Both the position numbers and the translations under genes were made by a program. This document shows positions 9,228 through 32,715 of a stretch of DNA of 64,000 nucleotides, piece after piece. Where the stretch lies: positions 171,625 through 235,624 of IMG/VR virus record IMGVR_UViG_3300027844_001828, one strand, 5' to 3'. Position 1 is the first letter of the stretch. Each line of letters begins with the position of its first letter. The notes beneath the pieces are model-generated. The model did no database searches and was not told the origin of the DNA. It saw only the letters and a program-made list of their open reading frames with translations.

Positions 9228-10670
9228 ATGGGCCTCAAAGCACACAAGTTTGGCACACATCCGTTTGACACAACCTACGATGTGATTGATTCCGCCACAC
9301 TCCAATGCACTGACCTCAAGAAAGGGTCTAACAAGTTCTATCAGATGGAGTTACACAAAAACGCCTCTGGTTATTGGAGGATCTTCACAGCTAACGGGCG
9401 CACAGGCTCATACTCTACCCAATTGGAGCGTATGCCTGAAGACGAGACGGCAGGACGCGCAGAGTACGCAAAGATTTTCCGCACCAAGACCACCCGCAAG
9501 AGTCAGCCTTATACTAAGGTTGATGTTGTGAATTCCAACCTTGGAACAGATGCTGGGAACCAAGTTGTTCAATCAGACGACTTCGATCAGAAGAACATCA
9601 CCGTTGCCGACACAGGCAAAAAGAATAAATCAAAGAAGGTTATTCCAATCAAGATTTCTCAGTTGGTTTCCAGGCTCTACAGTGAAGCCGGTAACGCTTG
9701 TAAAAGCCAGCTTCATGGAAGTGTTCAAGCGAGTGAAGAGAACCCTCTTGGGACTCTTACAAAAACTCAGATTGAAGATGGTAGAGCCATTCTTCAAGAG
9801 GCGAATGCCATCTTGGTCGCTGACGCCACTCGTATTGACTCAATTGAATCTGAGGTTATCGCTATAACTGACAAGTTCTACAGCACTATTCCACAGGAAA
9901 TTGCTCTTCGCCCGAAAACTAAAGCCGGAGAAGATGCCCGTGATGATTGGATGCGTGGAATTGCCCTCAACAATGCTACAATCCTTGATGATAAGTTTGA
10001 TCTTCTCGACCTTCTTGGTGATGTGAAGGGAATGATGGGCGGTTTCGCCACGACAGATGAAGAAAAACGTTTGAAAGAGGCGAACTGTGAGTTTTCTGAA
10101 GTGGACAGTGCCACTTTCAAACAGGTCTGCGATCTTATTGTCAATACTCAGTCGAAGCACCACAATTGGAAGTTGAATCCAAGGCGAATTTTTTCAATGA
10201 AAAGCAAATCTCAATCAAGTCATAAAAAAACAATGGGGGAAACCGGGAATTGTCAAGAACTTTTCCATGGATCTGGATCTCAAAATATTTTGGGAATATG
10301 TAAACGAGGAATTTTAATACGTCCTCCTGGGGTCTATATTACTGGCGCGTTATTGGGAAACGGGGCTTATTTCGCTAATAATAGTACAAAATCAAGTCAA
10401 TATTCTACTGGCAGATTTGGTGGATCTGGATCTTCCAATGGAAATACTTCATTTATGTTTGTTGCCAACGTGGCTCTTGGGAAAGTGAAAAAATTAAGCA
10501 AGGGTAGCAGTTCTATTGTCAAAGCACCGAATGGTTTTGATTCTGTTATGGGGGCTGCTAATTATACAGATTGTGGATGGAGTAAACTCCTTCATGATGA
10601 ATTTGTAGTTTATGATGTTAAACAGCATACTCTTGACTACTTGATTGAATTTGAACAATCTTATAGATAG
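9228..10670 (+). CDS. WGR-domain poly(ADP-ribose) polymerase
   Basis: WGR-like SNKFYQMEL...NGRTG; regulatory PLGTLTKTQI...FYSTIP; catalytic LFHGS, GAYFA, KSSQY, VALG, HDEFVVY (H-Y-E triad). Confidence 0.88.
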   Translation: MGLKAHKFGTHPFDTTYDVIDSATLQCTDLKKGSNKFYQMELHKNASGYWRIFTANGRTGSYSTQLERMPEDETAGRAEYAKIFRTKTTRKSQPYTKVDVVNSNLGTDAGNQVVQSDDFDQKNITVADTGKKNKSKKVIPIKISQLVSRLYSEAGNACKSQLHGSVQASEENPLGTLTKTQIEDGRAILQEANAILVADATRIDSIESEVIAITDKFYSTIPQEIALRPKTKAGEDARDDWMRGIALNNATILDDKFDLLDLLGDVKGMMGGFATTDEEKRLKEANCEFSEVDSATFKQVCDLIVNTQSKHHNWKLNPRRIFSMKSKSQSSHKKTMGETGNCQELFHGSGSQNILGICKRGILIRPPGVYITGALLGNGAYFANNSTKSSQYSTGRFGGSGSSNGNTSFMFVANVALGKVKKLSKGSSSIVKAPNGFDSVMGAANYTDCGWSKLLHDEFVVYDVKQHTLDYLIEFEQSYR

Positions 10671-14487: not shown

Positions 14488-14824
14488 GTCAAACAGGTTT
14501 GTAAAGCCGCATTGTTGGGTTATGGTATTGGATGCTGAGCAAATCAGCTTCAACCAAAACAGAATATAACAATGAGGTGTCTGATGACCACGAACAAGCA
14601 GATCGAAGAACTTCGCGAAGAGAACCGTGCCCTCAAGGCCAATCTCGCCAGAGCCAAGGGTTTGTTTCGTTCTCTTGAGTCAATGTTGGACATCAACGCC
14701 TCAATTCTCAAGGGCGACACCACGGGGTGTCACGACGCTTGGCGTTATACGGAAAAGGCAACATTTAACCTTCGCTCATTCTTTGACAGAGTTTATGGGG
14801 TAAAAGAACTCGTGGAGAAGAGCC

Positions 14825-15397
14825 GTGCAGAAAACCATTCATGATACGATAGAGTTCAAACCGGAATTGGTGTTTTTATCTTCGAAATACGGTAAGAAAG
14901 GGGGCATCTTCTCTCTTACCAACATTCCGATTGGAGAATCTATAACGATTGGGCGAAGCCCTAATTGTGACGTTTCGCGTCCGACAAGTAGTGCCTTAAG
15001 TAAAATACACTACAAAATCGTTAGGGTGGAGACCAAAAGGTTTGTTCTTGAAGACTGTGATAGCACGAATGGAACATTCATCAATGGTTTGCAAGCTCAT
15101 GAATCAAATATTGATGCCGGTGACATTATAGGCTCCGGTGATATTGAGATCTTGTTTAATGATGGCAATCCTCTCAACACAAAGAACAAGGCAGTAATTG
15201 ATTGGACTACAGAAAGTTTCAATGCCGAAGACATGGACAGCTTGAACCCATTCAACAATGGTGATTCAGCAATCGATAAAATTAAAAAGAAAAAGACTGA
15301 CTTAACGGTTAAGGTGATTTTATTTACCTTAGTCATCATCGCTTGCTTGGTCGGCGGATCATTGCTCGCATTATTAATCGGATTGGGGATACTCTAA
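14825..15397 (+). CDS. FHA-domain membrane protein
   Basis: IGRS..CD, SKIH, DSTNGTFING; C-terminal TM helix. Confidence 0.85.
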   Translation: MQKTIHDTIEFKPELVFLSSKYGKKGGIFSLTNIPIGESITIGRSPNCDVSRPTSSALSKIHYKIVRVETKRFVLEDCDSTNGTFINGLQAHESNIDAGDIIGSGDIEILFNDGNPLNTKNKAVIDWTTESFNAEDMDSLNPFNNGDSAIDKIKKKKTDLTVKVILFTLVIIACLVGGSLLALLIGLGIL

Positions 15398-15922
15398 ATG
15401 GAATATAAATACAAGGCAATGGATGGGCAAGGCAAAGAGTGTAAAGGAACTGTTGCTGCCAAGAGCGAGAATGAGGCCTGTTCTCTTATCAAAGAAATGG
15501 GTCAGTTCCCAATAAGTATTACCCCTGTTGGAGCCGAAAATGGTGAGAAAGAACATAGTAAGGCTCGTAAAGGTTTCGCTCTCATTATGGACAACCTCAA
15601 AGAGGCGGTTGAGACCTGGGATGGGCCAAACAAAGATGAGCCCGAATTGTCCGATTTAGAACGGGAGACCTCAAACGCTCTTAAACTCTCAGGGTTCGGC
15701 AAACACATAGTTGATTTTGTTTGCAAGTGCGTCAAAGACCGCAAGAATCCAAAGGAAGTTTTGCTTCACATGTATACAGCAGAACAAGAACTCCCCATTC
15801 AATTGTTGTTCGCATGGATCGAGAATCCCACCGATGAAAATGTGAAAAAACTTGGAAAGAGATTGAATATTGACATAGACAAGACTATCTTGAACATGGA
15901 GCAAGAAAATGCAAAGGAATGA
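15398..15922 (+). CDS. Protein with PilC/GspF-like N-terminal domain fused to unrelated C-terminus
   Basis: YKYKAMDGQGKECKGTVAAKSENEACSLIKEMGQFPISI; no TM or T2SS-F body. Confidence 0.65.
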   Translation: MEYKYKAMDGQGKECKGTVAAKSENEACSLIKEMGQFPISITPVGAENGEKEHSKARKGFALIMDNLKEAVETWDGPNKDEPELSDLERETSNALKLSGFGKHIVDFVCKCVKDRKNPKEVLLHMYTAEQELPIQLLFAWIENPTDENVKKLGKRLNIDIDKTILNMEQENAKE

Positions 15923-16098
15923 CACGCGAGTAATTGAACCATTCGGTTTTATGGGATTCTTTTTCTTGTTATGTTTGGAGGGGAGGCAGGTTCCCCAAGA
16001 AACAACAGACCTAAGATGAATCCGTGGTTCATTGTGTCAGTAATTTTTGCGGAGGCAATCTTAATTATAATAGTTTAACATAAACATCGAGAATTAAA

Positions 16099-16611
16099 AT
16101 GAAAAAACCTGTGCTAAAAAGATTTACATTTATTGAAATCCTTGTGGTTGCAGCTATAGTTTTTATCATAGGACCAATGATTTTTTCTGGTGTTTATCAG
16201 AAAACTGTTTATGATAAACACAAGGCTATTAAATCTCTTTATATATTCACAATGTCAAAAGAACAGTTTTATGAGTTCTACAATGTTGACAATGATGTTA
16301 TGAAAGCCGAGTTGAATGCATTATCCGAAAATAAATTGCACCCAAGGGACTCTTTACACTTTAAATAGTGGTTTCCTATTGATAAGGTTGAAACGGTGAC
16401 GAAACCATCCGGGAAAAACTTTTATCACACATGGCGAGCTTATGAAGAGGATACTGAAATTAGTGAGAAGGGATTTTATCTCTTGTTTTACGCTAATCAA
16501 ATTCCAAATTTTTCATCTTCATGGTCAGCGTATTCAACAATAACCAAAAACCCAAGTGGCCTTACGGAAGTTTCTTTCAATATTCTTCTTGACGCCAAGG
16601 AGATCCGATGA
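16099..16611 (+). pseudogene. Prepilin-like protein interrupted by an in-frame TAG (16366-16368)
   Basis: KRFTFIEILVVAAI N-terminus; ORF 16396 is in the same frame and is paralogous to the C-terminus of ORF 16608. Confidence 0.6.
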
Positions 16612-17036
16612 TAATCCGTAGACACAACTTTGACCTTGTTGCGCTTCTTGTTGCAATCTTTGCAATATTAATATTAGCCGGGCTCCTTTTTCCAGCCTGG
16701 AATCAAGCGAGATCGAAAGCGAGATACAAAAAACTTATTTTGAAAACTGAAGAAAAAATAGAGGCCCCTGTTGATAATGCTCAAGAAGCCGCTATAGTAG
16801 AGGTGATTGAATCAGATACTATCAAAGGCATTGATAAAGATAGTATTTATTATCACTGGCGGACATATGAAACTAAAAGCGATCTTACCGAGAAACAGTT
16901 CTACATCTTGTTTTATGCAAACGATTTGCCAGGGTTTAGCGACGTTTTCGAGGCGTACTGTACAATTACCAGAGAAAAAAGTAAATTAACGAAAAGTCAA
17001 TTTGACTTATTATTCAACGAGAAAGCAATACATTAG
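16608..17036 (+). CDS. Degenerate PVC-type prepilin-like protein
   Basis: RRHNFDLVALLVAIFAILILAGLLFPAWNQARSKAR resembles FTLIELLVVIAIIAILAxxLLPALxxARxxAR. Confidence 0.65.
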   Translation: MIIRRHNFDLVALLVAIFAILILAGLLFPAWNQARSKARYKKLILKTEEKIEAPVDNAQEAAIVEVIESDTIKGIDKDSIYYHWRTYETKSDLTEKQFYILFYANDLPGFSDVFEAYCTITREKSKLTKSQFDLLFNEKAIH

Positions 17037-17045
17037 GAGAAATAT

Positions 17046-18065
17046 ATGTCATCATCAACGAACGCCAGCATTGAAGCAGAAGAGGATGACCTACAGACAG
17101 CTTTAGAGTCTGACACCGGATACGCAGAGTCAAAGGGGCAACCCACTTCTGACGAGGGTTCTGTAGAGTGCGACAAGAGTGTTGATCCCACAAAGAAGAA
17201 AGATGTGATACAGTGGTCTTTGATCGGCGACAACAAATTTTTCCCTTGTGGTGAAACGGCAGGCCAGTTGATCCCTGGTGTTTATGAAATATCATCAAGC
17301 GATCATGGTATCTTCTTTGAAAAGATCCCAATTAAATTGGAAGGGTTGATTCGATTCCCGCAAGTAAACTCTGAATTGGTCATTGATGAAATTCAAAGGT
17401 TCTGGACCTTGGAAGATCAATTCAAGAAACATTCTCTCTCATATAAGAGAGGAATGTTACTCTGGGGTCCACCCGGATCTGGTAAGTCTTGCACGATCCA
17501 ATTGCTCACACATGATGTTGTGGCGCGAGGCGGCATTGCATTGAACATTAATAACCCGAATCTCTTTGGGCAAGGGTTGAGGATCTTGAGAAAGATTCAA
17601 CCTGAGACTCCAGTCATCGTGATCATGGAAGACCTTGACGCCTTGATTTATCACTACAACGAATCTGATATCTTGAATATCTTGGATGGCGTTACAGAAT
17701 TGCACAAGATTGTTTTCCTCGCAACAACCAACTATCCAGACAGACTTGGCGCTCGTGTTATTAACAGACCGTCAAGATTCGACAAGAGATTTAAGATTGG
17801 TCACCCAGATGATGAATCAAGAAAGATCTATATCGAACACTTGTTCAGAAATGACGAGTCAGATCTTGAGTCAATCGATATCGAAGGATGGGTTGAAGAC
17901 ACAGAAGGATTTTCTCTTGCACATATCAAGGAACTCTTTGTGGCGCATGTGATCCTTGGTGACGGTTATGATGATGCTGTTAAGATCTTGAGCAGCATGA
18001 GAGAAAGAGTCAAGCCGGAAGAGGAATTCGATCAGAATACGGTTGGATTCGGAAAAAGCGAGTGA
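17046..18065 (+). CDS. AAA+ ATPase (classical AAA clade)
   Basis: RGMLLWGPPGSGKS, IMED, ATTNYPDRL, RPSRFD. Confidence 0.88.
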   Translation: MSSSTNASIEAEEDDLQTALESDTGYAESKGQPTSDEGSVECDKSVDPTKKKDVIQWSLIGDNKFFPCGETAGQLIPGVYEISSSDHGIFFEKIPIKLEGLIRFPQVNSELVIDEIQRFWTLEDQFKKHSLSYKRGMLLWGPPGSGKSCTIQLLTHDVVARGGIALNINNPNLFGQGLRILRKIQPETPVIVIMEDLDALIYHYNESDILNILDGVTELHKIVFLATTNYPDRLGARVINRPSRFDKRFKIGHPDDESRKIYIEHLFRNDESDLESIDIEGWVEDTEGFSLAHIKELFVAHVILGDGYDDAVKILSSMRERVKPEEEFDQNTVGFGKSE

Positions 18066-19255: not shown

Positions 19256-19302
19256 AGTTGCACGTTGAAACAACGCCAAACACCAAACGGAGCACATCAA
19301 GC

Positions 19303-20427
19303 ATGAATGACGACATCAGAGCACTTTGGATGAAGAGAATCTTCTGCGAGATCAACAACTTGCAGTGGGCAATGAAGAAGCTTCAGGGACAGCATCCAAG
19401 GCTCATTGATCAATTGGAGCTTCCCAACATCATTATCAACGATGAGCTTAAACACGCTTGGGGCCGTTATCACAATAGTTCCAACACGATTGAACTCTCA
19501 GTGCGATTGCTCAACGATCATCCCTGGAGCGCGGTGAAACATGTCATTGGACATGAGTACGCGCATTTGGTCGTACATCGCGTTTTTGAGCTTCATGGGC
19601 GTCCACATGGCGAAGCTTTCAAGCGGGCTTGTAAAATTCTTGGAGTTGAAGACTCAACTACGTGCAGTCATGAGTTTCTTCAGAAGCAGGGTTACACAAA
19701 AGATGATTCTATGTTCCGAAAGGTTCAGAAGCTTCTTGCTTTGGCAGACGGCTCAAATGAGCACGAGTCCAGAAATGCAATGGTCAAGGCTCAGAGATTC
19801 ATTGAGCTTCACAATGTTGACTTGATCCGAGGCAATTCGGAGATCGAAGATCTTTATTTGAAAAGAACGGCGGGAAGATGCTGGAAAAGGATTCCGTCTT
19901 ACATTGATGCATTGGCGACAATCATCCGTGAGAACTACAAAGTCAAAGTCATCACGTCCGTCAATTATGGCGTCAATAAATATGGCGGAAGCGTGAGCGG
20001 GAAATGCCGCATGTTTGAATTCTTTGGAAAGCCAGAGCATTTGGACATTGCTGATTACGTTTTTAACTTTCTTCTTGACGCAGGCGAAAACGCTTGGAAG
20101 GAAGTTCAGAAGAGTGGTGAAGCGAAGGATTCTGGTTACAAAAAGATCGGTTACCTCAACGGGTTTTACGAAGGCTTCTCGGAGAAGCTTTGGGAAGCTC
20201 GTGAAGAGGTCGAAAAGGATTTTGACAACGACACAACCGCTATGATCTGCAAAGATGACGATATTCTTAACGAACAATACAGTCGCGCCTACACTCGTCT
20301 TGTGAACAGATACACTGGAAGTTCAAGAACCAGTAGTGGTTGGGGCGCTGGCGCATCTGCTGGCCGCATCTGCTCAATCAGACCTGGAGTCAGTGCCGGA
20401 GGCGGGGGGCCAAAACTTTTGACATGA
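19303..20427 (+). CDS. SprT-like zinc metalloprotease with DUF2786 domain
   Basis: HEYAH...PHGEAF; KVQKLLALA..SNEHE...AMVKAQ. Confidence 0.8.
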   Translation: MNDDIRALWMKRIFCEINNLQWAMKKLQGQHPRLIDQLELPNIIINDELKHAWGRYHNSSNTIELSVRLLNDHPWSAVKHVIGHEYAHLVVHRVFELHGRPHGEAFKRACKILGVEDSTTCSHEFLQKQGYTKDDSMFRKVQKLLALADGSNEHESRNAMVKAQRFIELHNVDLIRGNSEIEDLYLKRTAGRCWKRIPSYIDALATIIRENYKVKVITSVNYGVNKYGGSVSGKCRMFEFFGKPEHLDIADYVFNFLLDAGENAWKEVQKSGEAKDSGYKKIGYLNGFYEGFSEKLWEAREEVEKDFDNDTTAMICKDDDILNEQYSRAYTRLVNRYTGSSRTSSGWGAGASAGRICSIRPGVSAGGGGPKLLT

Positions 20428-21269
20428 ACATCGACATAAACAACGCATTAATACTCGGAGACGTACACGCTGACGTGTCGTTTATCACAATAGCCGTAGA
20501 AAAGGCCATAGAGCATGATCTTGAGGCGGTTATCGTGGTTGGGGACTTCGGGTATTGGCCAGAGGCGTATTTCGTCCACAGAGCCATTAAAGGCTATCCA
20601 TATATCTATGACAGAGATTACTTCGAGAGCAATCCAGAATTTGCATTGAAGGATGATCTTGAAGTGATACCTTCAGTCACGGCTCTTGAATACGATATCC
20701 CTGTTTATTTCATTGACGGAAATCATGAATTCTTTGGCGTCGAGGGAAAGCCTGGGTTGTCACAGTTTACAGAAATTACTGAGATAAACAAAAACCTCTT
20801 CTATGTTCCAAGGGGAATCGTTGAAAGGATTGCGAACACAACTGTGGCATTTGTCGGTGGCGCTGCCTCATTAGATAGAAACCCTGAGAAATTGGGGATT
20901 CATTGGTATGAAGAGGAAACCATAACATTTAATGATGTTAGGACGATACTTGATTACCCTAATGATATTGACGTTGTATTATCTCATGATATACCAATAT
21001 CATATTCTCCCCCTGAAGTACGCTTCGTTTTACCACATGCAATCCCAGGAAGAGAAGAGTTGGAAAAAATACTCACAAATAAATGTCCTAATCATTGGTA
21101 TTCTGGACATTACCACGTAAACGATGTAAAATATGATCGAAGATGTAACACCTTGTTCAGAATTCTTGCGTCAAATAAAAATATCTACGATGATGAACCC
21201 GTATTTGGAATTCATTTCGATTTCGTGAAAAACCAAGAAATCAAAGAAATAAGAGTTAATAAACAATGA
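20424..21269 (+). CDS. Calcineurin-like metallophosphoesterase
   Basis: GDVH, GDFG, GNHE, SHD, GHYH. Confidence 0.88.
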   Translation: MNIDINNALILGDVHADVSFITIAVEKAIEHDLEAVIVVGDFGYWPEAYFVHRAIKGYPYIYDRDYFESNPEFALKDDLEVIPSVTALEYDIPVYFIDGNHEFFGVEGKPGLSQFTEITEINKNLFYVPRGIVERIANTTVAFVGGAASLDRNPEKLGIHWYEEETITFNDVRTILDYPNDIDVVLSHDIPISYSPPEVRFVLPHAIPGREELEKILTNKCPNHWYSGHYHVNDVKYDRRCNTLFRILASNKNIYDDEPVFGIHFDFVKNQEIKEIRVNKQ

Positions 21270-21757
21270 TAAAATTAACAGATAAAGACATTTTAGTCGC
21301 CATGAACTTCATGATCAGCAAGCATGGATTCACCTTAGACGCCAACGGCGACCTCTATATATTCCACCCAATCCGTGTCGCAACTTACTTGATCGAAAGG
21401 GGTTGCAGTGAGTTGAAAATCGTTTGCGCCTTGCTTCATGATGTGGTTGAAGACTGCTATGTTGGACGCCGGGAAGAGGGATTGGACGACATTGAGCGGT
21501 ATTTTGGAACAGAGGCGAGAGAAATCCTTGACGTGATGAGTCACGATAAAAACGATAAGGATTACGATGAATACATTGGCGGGATTATCAGTAGTGCTTA
21601 TAGAGATATTACAAGAGAGATTAAATTGGCAGATATCAATGACAATACTTTGATATGGAGACTCGATCATTTCCCTGAGGATCGAAGGAAAAGAATGGAA
21701 GATAAATATGAGAAAGCTGAATCAAGAATTCGTCAAAGTATATACAATGAGAATTGA
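21266..21757 (+). CDS. HD-domain (p)ppGpp hydrolase-like protein (Mesh1/SAH type)
   Basis: YIFHPIRVA, ALLHDVVED, IKLADINDN. Confidence 0.8.
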   Translation: MIKLTDKDILVAMNFMISKHGFTLDANGDLYIFHPIRVATYLIERGCSELKIVCALLHDVVEDCYVGRREEGLDDIERYFGTEAREILDVMSHDKNDKDYDEYIGGIISSAYRDITREIKLADINDNTLIWRLDHFPEDRRKRMEDKYEKAESRIRQSIYNEN

Positions 21758-26859: not shown

Positions 26860-28280
26860 CATATTATGAATGAAGAAAAAGAGACTGGAAATCCCATTAT
26901 CAGCCTTATCCCAAAAAAATAAGTCATTTATTTGGGGATTCGTTATCTGCTCATTGTTGGTCTATGTAACATCTGGTCCAAAGCAAGAGGCGGAAAACCA
27001 AAGTGGAAGGGACAAAAACGATTGAAAAAAACAGAAGTTATTCATAGGGTTGAAATAGCAACAGTTAAACCAGACGTTTCTGGTTTTTAAGTAATTCCAA
27101 ATGTTATATATGATAAGATAGAATATGATGTTACTCTTTTTGATTCGAACCGAAAAGCACTTGCGACATGGGATCTCAGATATATCATAATCAAATAACT
27201 GGCGACCTTCATCTTATAACCAATTCGAAAAAAAAGGGGCGGTTGTATTGAATATCTGGAAAGGGCCATACGGAATCAGTGTGTCTGAATAGATAAATAG
27301 TCTATAACTAACTGTTAATGAATAATTTACGCGGAGTTATGAATAGATGGAAGAGTTAACTAAAGAATCAAGTCGATTGGAGTTTCTCTTTCCGATCATG
27401 ATAGCTAATAGAATGATTAGAACCAATTCTGCTGGCCCTGAGTGTGAAAGGAAATGGTTTAGAAAGCCTCATGGTTGGGAAACACAAAGAAAGACTCCAA
27501 CGTATTTGTATCAACAATGCGCGTTCTGTTCAGACAGGAAGATGATAAGGTTGGCTGAAGGATTTGATGAGCCAAGAGCAAGGGGGTGGGAAGACATAGG
27601 AGTGGTGAAACAAAATGAAAATTGAAGATGACGGGTCGCTCACACTTCACAGGTGTGATATAGCATGGTGGGTTGACCATTTTGAGAAATCAGACCAGCG
27701 TTTTAATGAAATGGATGTCAAAAAAAGAGCTTAGTGAATTGTCTGAGTTCTCGCCAGACGCATAGATCGCCGCCGCCTCTGCTCAGTCGGCAGGTTATAA
27801 AAAAAGACGGTTGAGTGGATCGAACAAAAAAGGTCAATAGAAAAAACATAATGAAGTAACATTATTAACACAATGAAGCGACATGTTCTTTTTTATAATA
27901 GCCGTGCTTATAACAGTCATCTTTATGATGGATGTGGAAGCGGGAATTATTACAACAGGCGTTTGTTCGCTTTTCACCCTAACAATACTTACAGGATTTA
28001 CAAACTGGATATTAATAGTCCTGATTATTGACACAATCATTACTGGCAGCGTTGATGAAACACTGTTTGGAATGACAATGTTTATAACAGCACTATTTTT
28101 ATTTTCAGAAATATGACAATGAGAGAAGAAGATAGAATTGAACTGAAGAAGGCCTTGAAAGAGGCATCGATTAGTACCAGACCATCAAACCGCTTTGATC
28201 GTGTGGCAACAATAGAATTTAAGAGCGGATCGACGAAATCAGCAGAACTAATATTGAACGCGGCAAGAAGCTTCGTCAGG

Positions 28281-28320
28281 ATGAAAGAAGATTAAAGAAG
28301 ATTAAAGAAGATTAAAGAAG
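28281..28320 (+). repeat. 10-bp tandem repeat x4
   Basis: AT(G/T)AAAGAAG repeated four times. Confidence 0.85.
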
Positions 28321-29095
28321 AATAAGTGACAACGCAAGATCTAATGGATTTGGATGGGGGGAACCGCCGTCCTGAAGAGAGGTAACCATGAAAATAAAGA
28401 TCATTCAAGCTGGACAAGCATTAAGATGTAAGAAATCTCACATTTTCAAGTTGATGGAGGTGGGGTCGAATGATCAGATAAATGTCGAATTCAAGTGGTG
28501 TATCTATTATGAGGATGACACCTTGGTTAAGACCAGAGCCGATAAAGAGGAATATGTTCTCCCGAAACAAATGTCCATAACATCAAGAAACGCTACAAAA
28601 GAAAGCGCTGAACTTGTACTCGAAGAAGAATTCTCAAAGTACATAGCATCAATGGAACAACCAGACGGCGACGACGCACTCGTTTTGTTCTTGGAAGGTA
28701 AAGAGAAAAACATTGTCTATCAAGATGAAGATGTATGGGTGGCAATTAAGGAATTCTTCTTGTTTTTGTGCGAATGGGACGAGCCACCAGAAGTTAAAGA
28801 GCCAGAAACCTATACACAAGAAGAACTTGAAGAACATCAAAAGTCCGTACCCGAACTCTGGGACGCAGATCCCGATTGCTGGCATGAACTCGATCCAAAC
28901 TCATGGTCTGGAATCAAATGTATGAAATGCACAGGGTGGTATCGCCTCTAATGAATAGAAACACAGTAATATTTATTATCCTCTTGTCGTTATTTTTATT
29001 AACGGCAGCATGCGGATTTCCAGCTATGGCTTGACAAACACATAATTATCCGGTATAGTACAAGCATTAACAACGACAAGAACTAAGAGAATAAC

Positions 29096-29749
29096 ATGAA
29101 CTTGACAAGAAAACTATTGGCGTCAACAGAGCCGTGCCTCAAAAGAAACGCGATCTATGACAAAGACCCACAACAATTAGCCTACACAGTCAATGCGTCC
29201 ACAAACCCAATGGTCTTTATGGATGCGCAGAAAAGGATCATCGGCGAAGAGATCATTATCAAAGGTGATCTTGAATATATTGAAAAGAACGAAGATAAAA
29301 TGCTCACCGGAATCTTCGACCTTGCACAAGAACACGAAAAAGTCAAATATGATTTCAGAGACTTTAGATTGAGAACGATGATAAGGGCCATCCAGGACAT
29401 TGAAAAACATGATCTCGTCGTCGCAAATATCATCATGGGAATCGAAGACTGGACCCAATTGAATCACTACTACTCGGCTAAAAAATGGAAGAGGGTCTTC
29501 GGAGCATACGCAAAGGTAAGACCCATGACCGAAGAAACCTGGAAAACAACTGGAATCATAGCAAAGATCCAAGGACCAATAAGACCAGTTGATATCATCG
29601 CCCTTCCAAATATGCCAAAAGGACAAATCTACCTCGCTACCAAGGGAGAGTATATTGGAGAAATTAGTTCGTCGGAATTGAAGGATAATGTAAGATCTTT
29701 AACGATCTGTATAACAAGCATGACTGGAGTTAATGTATTAACAACATGA
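29096..29749 (+). CDS. Hypothetical protein, possibly a degenerate major-capsid-protein paralog
   Basis: Order of motifs RKLL, IYDKD, IEKHDLVVANIIM, TGIIAKI.G, MPKGQIY, EYIG recalls HK97-fold MCPs of large phages (from memory only). Confidence 0.35.
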   Translation: MNLTRKLLASTEPCLKRNAIYDKDPQQLAYTVNASTNPMVFMDAQKRIIGEEIIIKGDLEYIEKNEDKMLTGIFDLAQEHEKVKYDFRDFRLRTMIRAIQDIEKHDLVVANIIMGIEDWTQLNHYYSAKKWKRVFGAYAKVRPMTEETWKTTGIIAKIQGPIRPVDIIALPNMPKGQIYLATKGEYIGEISSSELKDNVRSLTICITSMTGVNVLTT

Positions 29750-30062
29750 AAATAAGCAACTTCAAATTAGAAAATGAAGAGAGAGACGGTGAGCATGTGA
29801 TTTTTACAGGGACAGTTGAAGTAGTCACCGGCTCCTGGTTCTGGAAAAAGAAGACGGTCAAAGGAGTCAAGAAGAAAACTTTTTTGTGGTTCTGGACCGA
29901 CAATGGTGAATTAACTCCGGGAGAACTCGTGGAAAACGCCGCCAGAGTCTTTGCAGAAAAATCAGGCAAGCATCCCAAACTCTTGTGAAAGAAACAATAG
30001 ATAAAACTGTTGACAATAAATCACAAGACTTAAGAATAAATTTGAACAGTAGGAGCAAACCA

Positions 30063-30458
30063 ATGAAACCAACTATCGGATGGAAAGTCATTAGTAAAGA
30101 GAGAAAATCAATCCTTACAGGTGATGTGAAAGGATACGGAAAAGAATATCCAATCGGGAAAATGGTGGGAAGATCCAAACGAAGACTCCCAATTATGGCA
30201 ATGAAAACAAGACAAGATGCCGTGGATTTCATAAAGATGGAAAGAAAAAAACACGACGAACAGGAGAACTACTTCACAAGAGCATTAGATGAAGCAGTGA
30301 TCGTTCAAGTGGAAATGTATGGAATCAAAGACAAAACAGAATACGTTAATGATACTAAAATCTTCTTGGTCTCTACTACGCCAATTGTAAGCCAATCATA
30401 CAAAAGACCATGGGCCAAAGGAACCGTCCTCTGCGAAGCAATCAAATGTATAACTTGA
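30063..30458 (+). CDS. Hypothetical protein, paralog of ORF 26413
   Basis: AGGAG SD; shared motifs with ORF 26413. Confidence 0.65.
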   Translation: MKPTIGWKVISKERKSILTGDVKGYGKEYPIGKMVGRSKRRLPIMAMKTRQDAVDFIKMERKKHDEQENYFTRALDEAVIVQVEMYGIKDKTEYVNDTKIFLVSTTPIVSQSYKRPWAKGTVLCEAIKCIT

Positions 30459-31961
30459 TAGGAGAATAAACAATGAAACCAGAAGGATTACTTCTTAAAG
30501 CCGAAAGAGAATACATAGAAAAGAACAAGTCGCCACTAAGAGAAGACTACCACTATGTCTAAAATAATGAGAGGAAATCTTTTAATAAAACACGGATTCT
30601 CAGTAGCTGTTGATGGTGTTGAAATCACAAGCAATCTATGATAACCTTACCAAAAAATAAAGCCATCGATGCCATTATAGCCGTCTACGTCAAACCAAAG
30701 GAAATAAAATGACATATAACACGCATACAGAGGGACTACCGCCAGGAAATGATAAGGACAACAAAGCTAAGAATAGAAGACCAAACGAAGGTAAGATTAA
30801 ATGCCCAGAACTAAACAAAGAACAACAAATAAGATATAATGCATACCTTGAAGGATGCTTGAAATATGTACATATCTGGGAACCAACAGAAGAACAATCT
30901 CAAAGAGAATTGAAATACGCAGAAGAACAATCTCAAAGAGCATTGGAATACGCAAAAGATAAATCACGAAAAAGCTTTCAATAACAACATGAATGAACAT
31001 AAAGAAGAATAAGCATGGGATAAGCAATGTAACCTCGAATTAACTGGGAGAATAAAGAATGACAGGAATAGAATGGTATTGCATATACTGTGGAGGATCA
31101 ATACTTACAAGCCTCGGAATCATTATGAACAACGGTGATAGATTCATAAGAAAAAAACACCCAAGATATGACGCCGATATATCAATCATAGCATGCCCAT
31201 TACTATTGCCAATGTCAATATACGCATTGATAGGTAAATTTTTATACTTAATTAATATAAAGACCACGTACATGACATATAACGAAAAACAGGAGAACCA
31301 ATATGGAACTCAACTTTAACCCGTTATTTGAACAATTGAAAAGAAAAAGAATTATTACTAATAACAAGCCGAAGCACAACCATAAGAAAATTAAAGAACA
31401 AAAACAAAAACAAGAGCAAAAGAAAAGGATGCTGCCAATTATGACAGCGATAACAGGATGAAACAAATTATTAATAAAATCATTGACTGACTCTGGTGGA
31501 TCATTGTAATAAGAAAAAATGAGTCCCACCCATCCCTTAACATGAACAAAGTAAATAAACATGGAATGCTCATAGAACAAAATAGAATCATGAGACTAAG
31601 AAAAAAAGAACATGACATGGATCTTGATAATGAATGACAATGAGGGAGAACAATATGGAAGATGAAGTATAGAAGAAACTCAATTGATTGAGAAAGAGAT
31701 AAAACTAATAAGCACAGACGCAGAACTCGGAGAAGCATGGTACGCTTCTCTCATAAATTCAAAGAAAACCTCGATCAAGAAAGACAAAATGAAACTAAGA
31801 TCCGAGACAGCGATGGAGCAAGACCAGTTGAAATACACGATGGAGGAAACCTCGGAAGCCAAAGATCAGAGATCATAGTATGGAATGCAGATCATGATTC
31901 AGTCGAATACGTTAGAGATAACATGAAGGAACTCTGGAAAGTAGTGTTGTTAGGAGAGTAA

Positions 31962-32715
31962 CACTGAATGTTGCGCACATAGGCGAAGTAGCACTGAATG
32001 CGTATACGATACACACGCACACACAGGTGATACTATCAAATGATCTATAGGAGGCCTTAAAATTGATATAATGACCTGTATATAACCCATTAAGTGACAT
32101 TATGGATCATATATGACGCATTATAGAGTCCTACTGAATGTTGTGCAGGCTCCTATGACATGCACTGAATGCCCACGCAAGGGCGCACGGAACATGCACT
32201 GAATGCCTGGATAGACATGCGCTCGAACATGCGCTCGAACATACGTGTGAGAGCGCATGTTACAAAAAAGCGTAACACTTGTTATAAAATAATGTAACTA
32301 TTATATGAATGGGTAAGGACTGGGGAAAAGTGTTATACAAAAGTATAAATAATAATTAATAGAATCACTTTTTCGAATTTCAGGAGCGCTGCTCAAAAAA
32401 ATTTCTCCTTTAATGATGTTGTGTAAAGATCGCAAAATCAAACACTTACAAAAATGACTAAAATATAATAACTGTAAGGATTAAAATAGGCCGTTTAAGG
32501 GGTTGCACTGGTCGCAATAGAGGTGTATATTGTGTACCATGATGGGCAACTATCGTCGTAGTAGAGGTTAATGTTAGTAAGAAGATGACGAGTTTTTTGA
32601 CATGCACTGAATGTTCGTATGTGCGCATGTGTGTTAGTAAGTATGCACGCCTGTTAATAATGTGACCTGTCGTTTAAAAATGATGACCTGTGATTTCTAA
32701 GAGGTTAGCCAACTT
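31962..32715. other. Long non-coding locus; candidate replication origin or genome terminus
   Basis: CACTGAATG at 31962, 31992, 32163, 32197, 32605 plus TACTGAATG at 32132; AT-rich core; strand composition flips here. Confidence 0.5.

What the first reader, a model, noticed from the sequence alone, without database searches (positions are those of the whole stretch)
14825..17036. Cluster of host pilus/T2SS mimics: PilC N-domain fusion and two pseudo-pilins next to an FHA membrane protein
Seen: 15398 starts with a PilC/GspF-like cytoplasmic N-domain but lacks the membrane platform. 16099 has KR|FTFIEILVV. 16608 has a degenerate FDLVALLV...LFPAWNQARSKAR with Glu5 lost. Both pilin-like genes carry a paralogous C-terminal domain (Y.HWR.YE...EK.FY.LFYAN..P.FS). 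Established: PVC bacteria encode many FTLIELLVV...LLPA..AR proteins, and Pseudomonas phages block type IV pili with small proteins (Tip, Aqs1, PfsE). Inference: dominant-negative decoys that shut down the receptor pilus (superinfection exclusion), and a clue to a Lentisphaerae/PVC host.
Basis: partly seen in the sequence, partly recalled or inferred. Interest (0 to 1): 0.72.

Follow-up and report, generated by a model that had tools for sequence, protein, structure and literature searches.

The report
Phage copies of host pilus-machine parts
A 236-kb marine phage carries, side by side, cut-down copies of three inner-membrane host proteins, and their sequences point to a Lentisphaeria-like host, but whether they shut down the host pilus or secretion machine is untested.

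Summary
The sequence features are real, with one correction. The window is the end of a 235,624-bp marine virus record that uses the standard genetic code.

- Gene 15398-15922 encodes a confident GspF/PilC N-domain (T2SSF_N, ββαβ fold). It is fused to an uncharacterised helical domain, which I call X. It has no membrane platform.
- Genes 16099 and 16608 are tandem paralogues. Their N-termini match the hugely expanded Lentisphaeria-type pilin-like family.
- Correction: gene 16099 is cut by an in-frame TAG at 16366-16368. This TAG is conserved in 9 assemblies. The "paralogous C-domain" of 16099 therefore lies in a separate 71-80 codon frame.
- The FHA membrane protein is a homologue of a Lentisphaeria FHA+TM protein encoded directly upstream of ftsH. 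It is not a known pilus part.

Related phage contigs keep T2SSF_N and X together, either fused or as adjacent genes. They lack the pilin-likes, so the pilin-like pair is a lineage-specific addition. The phage has no GspE-type ATPase, no prepilin peptidase and no platform core, so it cannot build its own filament.

The best reading is that these are host-derived fragments that interfere with, or plug into, the host type IV filament machinery. That function is inferred and was not tested. The Lentisphaeria host clue is supported among the groups I could test. The Pf28597-type stand-alone phage T2SSF_N proteins appear to be undescribed.

The parts
14825..15397 (+). FHA + C-terminal transmembrane protein (190 aa, tail-anchored). 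The pThr-binding motifs GR, SxxH and NG are present.
   Evidence: PF00498 E 1.3e-13. It is the only FHA in the phage. It is 36% identical over 140 aa (E 3e-14) to a 177-aa Lentisphaeria FHA+TM protein. That host protein lies directly upstream of ftsH in 4 of 4 genomes examined.
15398..15577 (+). T2SSF_N domain: the N-domain of the GspF/PilC platform protein (residues 1-60 of the 174-aa protein).
   Evidence: TIGR02120 positions 1-52, E 4e-6. Precomputed PF28597 T2SSF_N. 250 of 401 genomes matched at the N-terminus of ~420-450-aa frames. ββαβ fold at pLDDT 97-98. AFDB cluster hits are GspF N-domains.
15578..15922 (+). Linker helix plus 'X' domain (residues ~75-174). All-helical, with invariant G, H, F, C, P and W. 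Function unknown. The start codon abuts the stop of the FHA gene (TAAATG).
   Evidence: Exhaustive HMMER search: P0003 (fusion) and the stand-alone proteins P0005, 7, 9, 14, 22, 36 and 52. Model helices 86-173. No PDB, Pfam or fold match.
15923..16098 (.). 176-nt spacer between the T2SSF_N-X gene and the pilin-like pair.
   Evidence: No ORF here. No promoter or terminator signal above chance, and the fold z-score is -0.84.
16099..16368 (+). Pilin-like A, N-part (89 aa): MKKPVLKR|FTFIEILVV with Glu5 kept and no Gly-1. It ends at the in-frame TAG 16366-16368.
   Evidence: Lentisphaerota N-terminal profile E 5.7e-5; upstream-only profile E 0.0012, rank 1 of 3,965. PF07963 is below its cut-off. 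The TAG is in all 9 assemblies.
16369..16611 (+). 80 open codons in the same frame behind the TAG, holding the paralogous C-domain. A 71-aa ORF is possible from GTG 16396, with a weak AAGG upstream.
   Evidence: 42% identity to the C-domain of 16608 (E 3e-21). Called as a separate 71-aa gene in public assemblies.
16608..17036 (+). Pilin-like B (142 aa): MIIRRHN|FDLVALLVAIFAILILAGLLFPAWNQARSKAR plus an orphan C-domain with the internal repeat LTEKQFYILFYAND / LTKSQFDLLFNEKA. It has a strong Shine-Dalgarno sequence (AAGGAGA).
   Evidence: Profile E 4e-12 (partly circular). 29 of 31 Lentisphaeria genomes hit. 87 of 100 Atlas neighbours are N_methyl clusters. Best PDB hit is geopilin, in register. 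The C-domain has no homologue.
17046..18065 (+). Classical-clade AAA+ ATPase (339 aa), with no membrane segment and no protease domain.
   Evidence: PF00004 E 5e-13. CDC48, PAN and FtsH family hits. 25% identical to the AAA module of Lentisphaeria FtsH (E 6e-12). A distant AAA gene lies ~2 kb after the X gene in relative L157.

Best explanation
This is a patch of host-derived fragments of inner-membrane machinery in a lytic-type marine jumbo phage whose host is most likely a Lentisphaeria-like PVC bacterium.

(1) T2SSF_N-X. It carries the small, peripheral ββαβ N-domain of the type IV filament platform protein (GspF/PilC), without the platform. Phages keep this domain in several lineages, either tail-anchored to the membrane or joined to domain X. 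The inferred role is a mimic. It would compete with the host platform's own N-domain for that domain's still unknown partner. That would weaken filament assembly (pili, or the pseudopilus of a T2SS-like machine).

(2) The two pilin-like genes. They are a tandem duplication of a gene that acquired a Lentisphaeria-type N-terminus: a short basic leader without Gly-1, then FTLIELLVV...LLPALN.AR.KAR. That segment should insert them into the inner membrane like host pilin-like proteins and bring them to the same machinery. Copy B has lost Glu5. Copy A is truncated by a TAG. Neither has a pilin globular head. They are therefore more likely to block or merely use the pathway than to build a filament.

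(3) FHA+TM protein. It copies a host protein that is genetically linked to ftsH, and it would read host Ser/Thr phosphorylation at the membrane.

Shown: homologies, architectures, paralogy, the stop codon, the distribution in relatives, and the absence of a complete phage-encoded system. Inferred: membrane topology, interference with the host machine, and any benefit such as exclusion of other phages or avoiding re-adsorption.
For: - T2SSF_N identity.
- The domain recurs in phage-like or viral contigs as 83-126-aa proteins with a C-terminal TM (P0010, P0013, P0016, L155, L163). Next to or fused with X: P0003 fusion; L155/L156 adjacent with a 4-bp overlap; the L157 upstream fragment has the same TM plus tail.
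- The phage lacks T2SSE, Peptidase_A24 and T2SSF core domains, so the fragments can act only on a host machine.
- Pilin-like N-termini.
- Only these two ORFs and this one T2SSF_N exist in 235 kb, and they sit about 180 nt apart.
- Literature. The PulF N-domain is peripheral and dispensable but needed for full pilus assembly and secretion, and its partner is unknown (PMC10790770). The class III N-terminal segment alone suffices for membrane insertion. Glu5 mutants cannot homopolymerise but do co-assemble (PMC4471445). Phages are known to disable T4P via PilB or PilC using unrelated small proteins (PMC11656802, PMC8764522, PMC13436744).
Against: - There is no functional test of any kind.
- The partner of the platform N-domain is unknown, so 'decoy' has no defined target.
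- Relatives with T2SSF_N and X lack pilin-likes, so the adjacency may reflect an insertion hotspot rather than a shared function.
- Copy A is interrupted by a stop, which is compatible with decay.
- The FHA+TM counterpart in Lentisphaeria is linked to ftsH, not to pili.
- The same ββαβ fold is used by unrelated phage inhibitors (T7 Gp2, p56).
- In Lentisphaeria the pilin-like N-terminus sits on hundreds of proteins per genome, so it may simply be the local membrane-anchoring signal.
- The metatranscriptome gave no coverage of the pilin-like genes.
Confidence: 0.45

Rival explanations
1. Targeting signal only. The pilin-type N-termini are just the host's commonest inner-membrane anchor or export signal. 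The phage borrowed them to place the orphan C-domain (the real effector) on the periplasmic side, with no action on the filament machinery. T2SSF_N-X would work on something else.
For: - Lentisphaeria genomes carry 100-260 candidate genes with this N-terminus.
- The family mostly lacks Gly-1, so many members may never enter a pilus.
- The N-terminal segment alone suffices for SRP/Sec insertion. Archaeal sugar-binding proteins use class III signals for surface display (PMC4471445).
- The conserved, duplicated part of the two genes is the C-domain.
- Relatives of the T2SSF_N-X module have no pilin-likes.
Against: - It does not explain why the only pilin-like genes of a 235-kb genome lie next to its only T2SSF_N gene.
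- In copy A the C-domain is cut off from the anchor by a stop.
- Even a mere anchor of this type would share the membrane pool and the machinery contacts of host pilin-likes.
Confidence: 0.25
2. Decaying cargo. The pilin-like pair, or at least copy A, is a degrading remnant of horizontally acquired DNA with no present function.
For: - In-frame TAG in copy A under a standard code.
- Each paralogue keeps only half of the ancestral N-terminal motif.
- There are no homologues anywhere else.
- General pilin profiles fail.
Against: - 80 codons behind the TAG remain open and 42% identical to copy B.
- Copy B is intact, has a strong Shine-Dalgarno sequence and overlaps the preceding frame by 4 nt.
- The region is identical, apart from 0-4 SNPs, in 9 assemblies from several marine samples, with no indels.
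Confidence: 0.12
3. T2SSF_N-X acts elsewhere. It could be a Gp2/YkzG-like RNA-polymerase binder, or, with FHA+TM and the AAA+ ATPase, a modulator of FtsH-type membrane proteolysis. On this reading it has nothing to do with pili or secretion.
For: - The best solved-structure matches of the N-domain are YkzG (RNAP epsilon) and T7 Gp2, with TM by target 0.6-0.73. The PulF paper notes the same similarity (PMC10790770).
- The FHA+TM homologue sits upstream of ftsH in 4 of 4 Lentisphaeria genomes.
- The neighbouring phage gene is a classical AAA ATPase.
Against: - Sequence similarity (40-55% identity, family-specific invariant residues Y5, A7, D9, G12, E14, G17, G35, F37, P38) places the domain in T2SSF_N, not with Gp2 or YkzG.
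- The fold matches are weak (E 0.02-0.1). No T2SSF_N structure is in the PDB to compete with them.
- The AAA similarity to FtsH is generic (25%).
Confidence: 0.13

Closest known systems
Phage-encoded type IV pilus inhibitors: Tip (D3112), Aqs1 (DMS3), Zip, PfsE (Pf4)
   Same: They are small phage proteins that act on the inner-membrane and cytoplasmic part of the pilus machine (PilB, PilZ-PilB, PilC), and so block pilus-dependent superinfection (PMC11656802, PMC8764522, PMC13436744). If the best explanation holds, the outcome here would be the same.
   Different: Those proteins are unrelated in sequence to any pilus component. Here the proteins are homologous fragments of the machine itself: the platform N-domain and pilin N-termini. 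The known cases are temperate or filamentous Pseudomonas phages. This is a 236-kb marine phage, and no activity has been shown.
N-domain of GspF/PilC platform proteins (Pfam PF28597 T2SSF_N; PulF residues 1-54)
   Same: Same sequence family and same predicted ββαβ fold. In relatives it is also tethered to the membrane.
   Different: It is not followed by the Cyto1, TM and Cyto2 platform. It is fused instead to an uncharacterised helical domain X, or to a single TM, and it is encoded by a virus.
Lentisphaeria/PVC expanded family of 'prepilin-type N-terminal cleavage/methylation domain' proteins (FTLIELLVVIAIIAILA.MLLPALNKAREKA...)
   Same: N-terminal ~40 residues: a short basic leader usually without Gly-1, a hydrophobic helix, and the LLPA.N.AR.KA motif. 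Copy B is 50-64% identical.
   Different: Host members are 200-350 aa with a Cys-containing ...C.SNLKQ... continuation and a large C-terminal domain. The phage proteins are 89 and 142 aa with an orphan helical C-domain. Copy B lacks Thr2 and Glu5. Copy A lacks the LLPA.N.AR.KA half.
Lentisphaeria FHA+TM protein encoded upstream of ftsH
   Same: Same length class (177-190 aa), with an N-terminal FHA domain and a C-terminal TM. 34-38% identity.
   Different: In the phage it is followed by T2SSF_N-X rather than ftsH. The function of the host protein is itself unknown.

Membership tests
Type IV pilin / pseudopilin (class III signal peptide) | Match to the N-terminal methylation-site profiles (PF07963 N_methyl, TIGR02532) above their cut-offs | tested here: not met
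   PF07963 scores 9.4-11.8 bits for 16099 (cut-off 21.2) and gives nothing for 16608. TIGR02532 gives no hit at E<=10 in the whole phage.
Type IV pilin / pseudopilin (class III signal peptide) | Leader peptide ending in Gly-1, which is critical for prepilin peptidase cleavage (PMC4471445) | tested here: not met
   Residue -1 is Arg in 16099 and Asn in 16608. The Lentisphaerota relatives also mostly lack Gly-1: it is Gly in 7 of 82.
Type IV pilin / pseudopilin (class III signal peptide) | About 21 hydrophobic residues interrupted by Glu5 | tested here: inconclusive
   16099 has FTFIE with Glu5 and a hydrophobic tract, so the feature is met. 16608 has FDLVA with Glu5 replaced by Ala, so it is not met.
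Type IV pilin / pseudopilin (class III signal peptide) | Globular head of a β-meander packed on α1C | tested here: inconclusive
   The model of 16608 has a long N-terminal helix (residues 2-50) and then only helices, but pLDDT is 56.6, so it is unreliable. 16099 stops after 89 residues.
Lentisphaeria-type expanded pilin-like family | N-terminal ~40 residues alignable with FTLIELLVVIAIIAILA.MLLPALN[KQ]AR.KA | tested here: met
   Profile E 4e-12 for 16608 (partly circular) and 5.7e-5 for 16099 (independent), next best 0.94. 16608 as a single-sequence query hits 29 of 31 genomes. 16099 as a single-sequence query found nothing at E<=5e-4.
Lentisphaeria-type expanded pilin-like family | Large C-terminal domain following ...C.SNLKQ... 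| tested here: not met
   The phage C-domain gave no match in 301 genomes of that phylum and none in the protein collections.
GspF/PilC platform protein (T2SSF) | N-domain (T2SSF_N, ββαβ) | tested here: met
GspF/PilC platform protein (T2SSF) | Two T2SSF (PF00482) cytoplasmic domains and three TM segments | tested here: not met
   No PF00482 match in the phage at E<=1. The 174-aa protein has no hydrophobic segment, and residues 60-174 never matched bacterial GspF.
Complete type IV filament system encoded by the phage | GspE/PilB-type ATPase, prepilin peptidase and platform core | tested here: not met
   PF00437, PF01478 and PF00482 are all without a match in the 235,624-bp record, which is 93% complete by CheckV.
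Phage anti-pilus / superinfection-exclusion proteins (Tip, Aqs1, PfsE type) | Binding to PilB or PilC and loss of piliation or of pilus-dependent adsorption | not testable with these tools

The most novel reading that the evidence does not exclude
Phages of several lineages encode stand-alone copies of the platform-protein N-domain: tail-anchored, or fused or paired with domain X. These would act as molecular mimics that disable or capture type IV filament machines. In this phage the strategy is doubled by non-assembling pilin mimics tuned to the peculiar Gly-less pilin-like family of Lentisphaeria. If true, it would be the first anti-pilus or anti-secretion mechanism based on mimicry of machine parts. 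The phage protein would also be a ready-made probe for the unknown partner and role of the GspF/PilC N-domain.
Probability: 0.3. Interest if true: 0.8.

Novelty: new variant of a known kind. Interest (0 to 1): 0.6.

Why it matters
- The function of the GspF/PilC N-domain is an open point in type II secretion and type IV pilus biology. It is dispensable yet needed for full efficiency, and it has no known partner (PMC10790770).
- A virus that keeps only that domain, in several architectures, suggests it has a discrete binding target worth finding. The phage protein could serve as bait.
- All known phage anti-pilus proteins are unrelated peptides, so mimicry by machine fragments would be a different route to the same end.
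- The N-termini give a sequence-based host clue (Lentisphaeria-like) for an uncultured, widely detected marine jumbo phage. Phages of that group are essentially unknown.
- The side observation that the expanded Lentisphaerota pilin-like family mostly lacks the 'invariant' Gly-1 raises the question of how, or whether, those hundreds of proteins are processed.

Tried and rejected
- Alternative genetic code for the in-frame TAG: rejected. All three stops end long ORFs, there is no suppressor tRNA, and coding density shows no clear gain from recoding.
- K-mer homologue searches for the 142-aa and 174-aa proteins, and for the C-domain alignment: only the phage's own proteins were found.
- GenBank phages: no DNA relative and no tblastn hit.
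- First strict back-translated motif scan of genome contigs: 0 hits.
- X-domain: no Pfam, PDB-sequence, Foldseek or VIA match of value. P0004 and P0011 are low-complexity repeat artefacts.
- Structure of pilin-like B: pLDDT 56.6, too poor for a fold search. The Atlas structural neighbours of the 89-aa protein rest on a pLDDT 0.57 model and are meaningless.
- Complex prediction on FHA(1-160) with T2SSF_N-X: no verdict. This is evidence neither way.
- Metatranscriptome run X18: two short contigs at 14560-14710 and 15145-15408 only. Transcription is not shown, and there is nothing over the pilin-likes.
- Promoter/terminator scan and fold of the 176-nt spacer: at chance level.
- Phage-encoded Ser/Thr kinase to feed the FHA domain: none.
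- Synteny of the AAA gene with relative L157: only generic AAA similarity (23%), so I treat it as weak.
Full report
**Where the window lies**

The window is bases 171,625-235,624 of a 235,624-bp IMG/VR virus record that is 93% complete by CheckV. GC content is 41%. There are 11 tRNAs and none is a suppressor. TAA, TGA and TAG end 89, 53 and 36 of the 178 long + strand ORFs. Reassigning any stop gives no clear gain, so the code is standard.

Near-identical copies of the region (at least 99.9%) occur in at least nine assemblies from several marine or seawater metagenomes. GenBank phages hold no relative.

**The genes**

Five co-directional genes fill 14825-18065.

(1) 14825-15397: a 190-aa protein with an FHA domain (E 1.3e-13). 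It keeps the GR, SxxH and NG motifs and ends in one hydrophobic segment.

(2) 15398-15922: a 174-aa protein that starts at the stop of gene 1 (TAAATG).

(3) After a 176-nt spacer, 16099-16368: an 89-aa protein, MKKPVLKR-FTFIEILVV..., that stops at TAG 16366-16368. Eighty more open codons follow in the same frame, with a possible GTG start at 16396.

(4) 16608-17036: a 142-aa protein, MIIRRHN-FDLVALLVAIFAILILAGLLFPAWNQARSKAR...

(5) 17046-18065: a classical AAA+ ATPase.

**The GspF/PilC-like piece**

- Residues 3-55 of the 174-aa protein align to positions 1-52 of TIGR02120 GspF (E 4e-6).
- The identical protein carries a precomputed hit to Pfam PF28597 T2SSF_N. All 100 Atlas feature neighbours are T2SSF_N clusters.
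- Against 401 genomes of the phylum of Victivallis vadensis, 250 have a match at E<=0.01. The match is always residues ~2-60 of the phage protein against the N-terminus of a ~420-450-aa frame. The best is 51-55% identical (E 2e-9). The remaining 115 residues never match.
- With an alignment of hits, AlphaFold2 gives a model of mean pLDDT 86.8. It has a ββαβ N-domain (pLDDT 97-98), a linker helix, and a five-helix C-terminal domain.
- ββαβ is the fold predicted for the PulF N-domain. That domain is peripheral and is joined to the platform by a flexible loop. It is dispensable but needed for full pilus assembly and secretion, and its partner is unknown (PMC10790770).
- Foldseek against AlphaFold DB returns GspF N-domains. 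Against the PDB, which has no T2SSF_N structure, it returns the look-alikes YkzG, T7 Gp2 and p56 weakly. The PulF paper noted the same.
- The phage has no PF00482 platform core, no GspE-type ATPase and no prepilin peptidase.

**Domain X and the relatives**

The exhaustive HMMER search found 59 proteins. One class matches only the N-domain. Several of these are 83-95-aa proteins made of T2SSF_N plus a C-terminal membrane segment (P0010, P0013, P0016). They sit in contigs of small overlapping genes with TnpB or a methylase.

Two further IMG/VR viral contigs encode 91-94-aa versions.

The other class matches residues ~75-170, which I call domain X:
- P0003 (156 aa) is a second T2SSF_N-X fusion.
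- P0005, P0007, P0009, P0014, P0022, P0036 and P0052 (107-133 aa) are X alone.
- Invariant residues are G, H, F, C, P and W.

In L155/L156 the X gene is preceded, with a 4-bp overlap, by a 122-aa T2SSF_N+TM protein. In L157 the truncated upstream gene ends in the same TM plus tail.

T2SSF_N and X are thus fused in two lineages and adjacent in others, which argues that they work together.

X has no Pfam, PDB or fold match. None of these relatives has pilin-like genes. The gene after X there is a different 180-199-aa protein.

**The pilin-like pair**

General pilin profiles fail. PF07963 scores 10-12 bits against a cut-off of 21.2, and TIGR02532 finds nothing. The best PDB hit of each N-terminal 45 residues is nevertheless a geopilin, in register, at non-significant E. 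In the Atlas, 87 of 100 feature neighbours of the 142-aa protein are N_methyl clusters (a lead only).

I back-translated L[LF]PA.N[KQ]AR.KA and scanned the genome collection. Almost all listed loci are from Lentisphaerota. Because the scan was truncated, this is not a fair taxonomic sample.

The 82 N-termini recovered read FTLIELLVVIAIIAILA.M-LLPALNKAREKA. Their leaders are often only MKK or MKRR, and residue -1 is Gly in just 7 of 82.

A profile of positions -6 to +38, searched against all 3,965 six-frame phage ORFs, finds exactly the two genes:
- 16608: E 4e-12. This is partly circular, because the motif came from this protein.
- 16099: E 5.7e-5. This is independent.
- Next best: E 0.94.

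A profile limited to the part upstream of the motif ranks them first and second (E 0.0012 and 0.59).

As a single query, the first 45 residues of the 16608 protein hit 29 of 31 genomes of the class of Victivallis vadensis (Lentisphaeria by NCBI taxonomy). There are up to 150 or more hits per genome, at 50-64% identity and up to 37 bits. At E<=5e-6 the counts are:
- 16/31 for that class.
- 0/31 for the class of a Verrucomicrobiia genome (p 2e-6).
- 2/9 for a small candidate phylum.

The 16099 N-terminus alone is too short and diverged to score in whole genomes.

The two genes are paralogues. The frame behind the TAG is 42% identical to the C-terminal 72 residues of the 16608 protein (E 3e-21). 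Each copy keeps a different half of the ancestral N-terminus. Copy A keeps FT.IE.LVV, and copy B keeps ILAG.L.PA.N.AR.KAR.

The C-domain has an internal repeat (LTEKQFYILFYAND / LTKSQFDLLFNEKA). It has no homologue in the protein collections or in 301 sampled genomes. Its model is unreliable.

**The TAG**

It is present in all nine assemblies and in the DNA runs laid on the region. Three readings remain open:
- Termination, giving an 89-aa membrane stub plus an untranslated remnant.
- A separately initiated 71-aa product. Without a signal segment this product would stay in the cytoplasm.
- Low-level read-through.

**The FHA protein**

Lentisphaeria genomes encode 177-218-aa proteins that match the phage protein over most of its length, at 30-38% identity. 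The host proteins whose sequence I read (177-178 aa, G001 and G015) have the same FHA + C-terminal TM layout. In 4 of 4 genomes with enough context, that gene lies directly upstream of ftsH. A PP2C phosphatase and an ABC ATPase lie just before it.

The phage has no protein kinase, so its FHA domain would read host phosphorylation. This makes the FHA protein a third host-like inner-membrane piece. It is not, however, a pilus component.

**Interpretation**

The homologies, the architectures, the duplication, the stop, the absence of a complete phage-encoded filament system and the distribution among relatives are shown.

The following are inferred:
- The T2SSF_N proteins mimic the platform N-domain and compete for its partner.
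- The pilin-like N-termini take the two small proteins into the membrane pool and machinery used by host pilin-likes.
- The net effect is interference with a type IV filament machine.

That the only T2SSF_N gene and the only pilin-like genes of a 235-kb genome lie ~180 nt apart favours a common target. That relatives lack the pilin-likes weakens this.

Known phage anti-pilus proteins (Tip, Aqs1, Zip, PfsE) reach PilB or PilC with unrelated small proteins (PMC11656802, PMC8764522, PMC13436744). I found no paper on phage T2SSF_N.

The host clue is supported among the groups tested. As a post hoc cross-tabulation, the T2SSF_N domain also scores better in Lentisphaeria than in Verrucomicrobiia: 12/24 against 2/14 genomes at E<=1e-5, p 0.04. 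Planctomycetota, Kiritimatiellia, Omnitrophota and Armatimonadota were not tested separately.

**Verdict**

This is a real and unusual set of host-derived fragments. One member, the stand-alone viral T2SSF_N (with X), appears undescribed and recurs across viral contigs. The proposed decoy and exclusion function remains a hypothesis.

Noticed in passing
window 9228-10670 (+): A 480-aa protein with WGR, PARP regulatory and PARP catalytic domains. The Pfam hits are precomputed on the identical gene in several assemblies. It is a eukaryote-style poly(ADP-ribose) polymerase architecture in a marine jumbo phage.
   Followed up: no
loci L013-L092 (Lentisphaerota genomes): In the expanded pilin-like family (FTLIELLVVIAIIAILA.MLLPALNKAREKA) the residue before Phe1 is Gly in only 7 of 82 sequences, and leaders are often just MKK or MKRR. 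The review PMC4471445 calls Gly-1 invariant and critical for prepilin peptidase, so processing of these hundreds of proteins per genome is unclear.
   Followed up: partly
L164 (G001 Victivallis vadensis C9), L165 (G015), L166 (G007), L167 (G002): A conserved Lentisphaeria gene string: PP2C phosphatase, oligopeptide-type ABC ATPase, a 177-178-aa FHA + C-terminal TM protein, then FtsH. It is present in 4 of 4 genomes examined. The phage FHA+TM protein is a homologue of the third gene.
   Followed up: partly
window 16366-16368: An in-frame TAG splits pilin-like gene A from its paralogous C-domain. It is conserved in 9 assemblies, and the phage otherwise uses TAG as a stop.
   Followed up: yes
L155:28-393 and 393-722; L152:78-548; L158, L159, L160, L162, L163: A family of small viral or phage-like proteins made of T2SSF_N plus a C-terminal TM segment (83-126 aa). 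A second family consists of ~110-aa 'X' proteins. The two are adjacent or fused in some contigs.
   Followed up: partly
window 28000-32000: A stretch with the lowest GC in the window (0.355-0.40) and a strong AT skew (up to 0.37). It has few ORFs of 100 aa or more, and only short tandem repeats were found.
   Followed up: no
window 19258-20427 and 20340-21757: A fusion protein of SprT-like metallopeptidase, DUF2786 and DUF7168 (phrog_421). It is followed by a metallophosphatase and an HD-domain gene.
   Followed up: no
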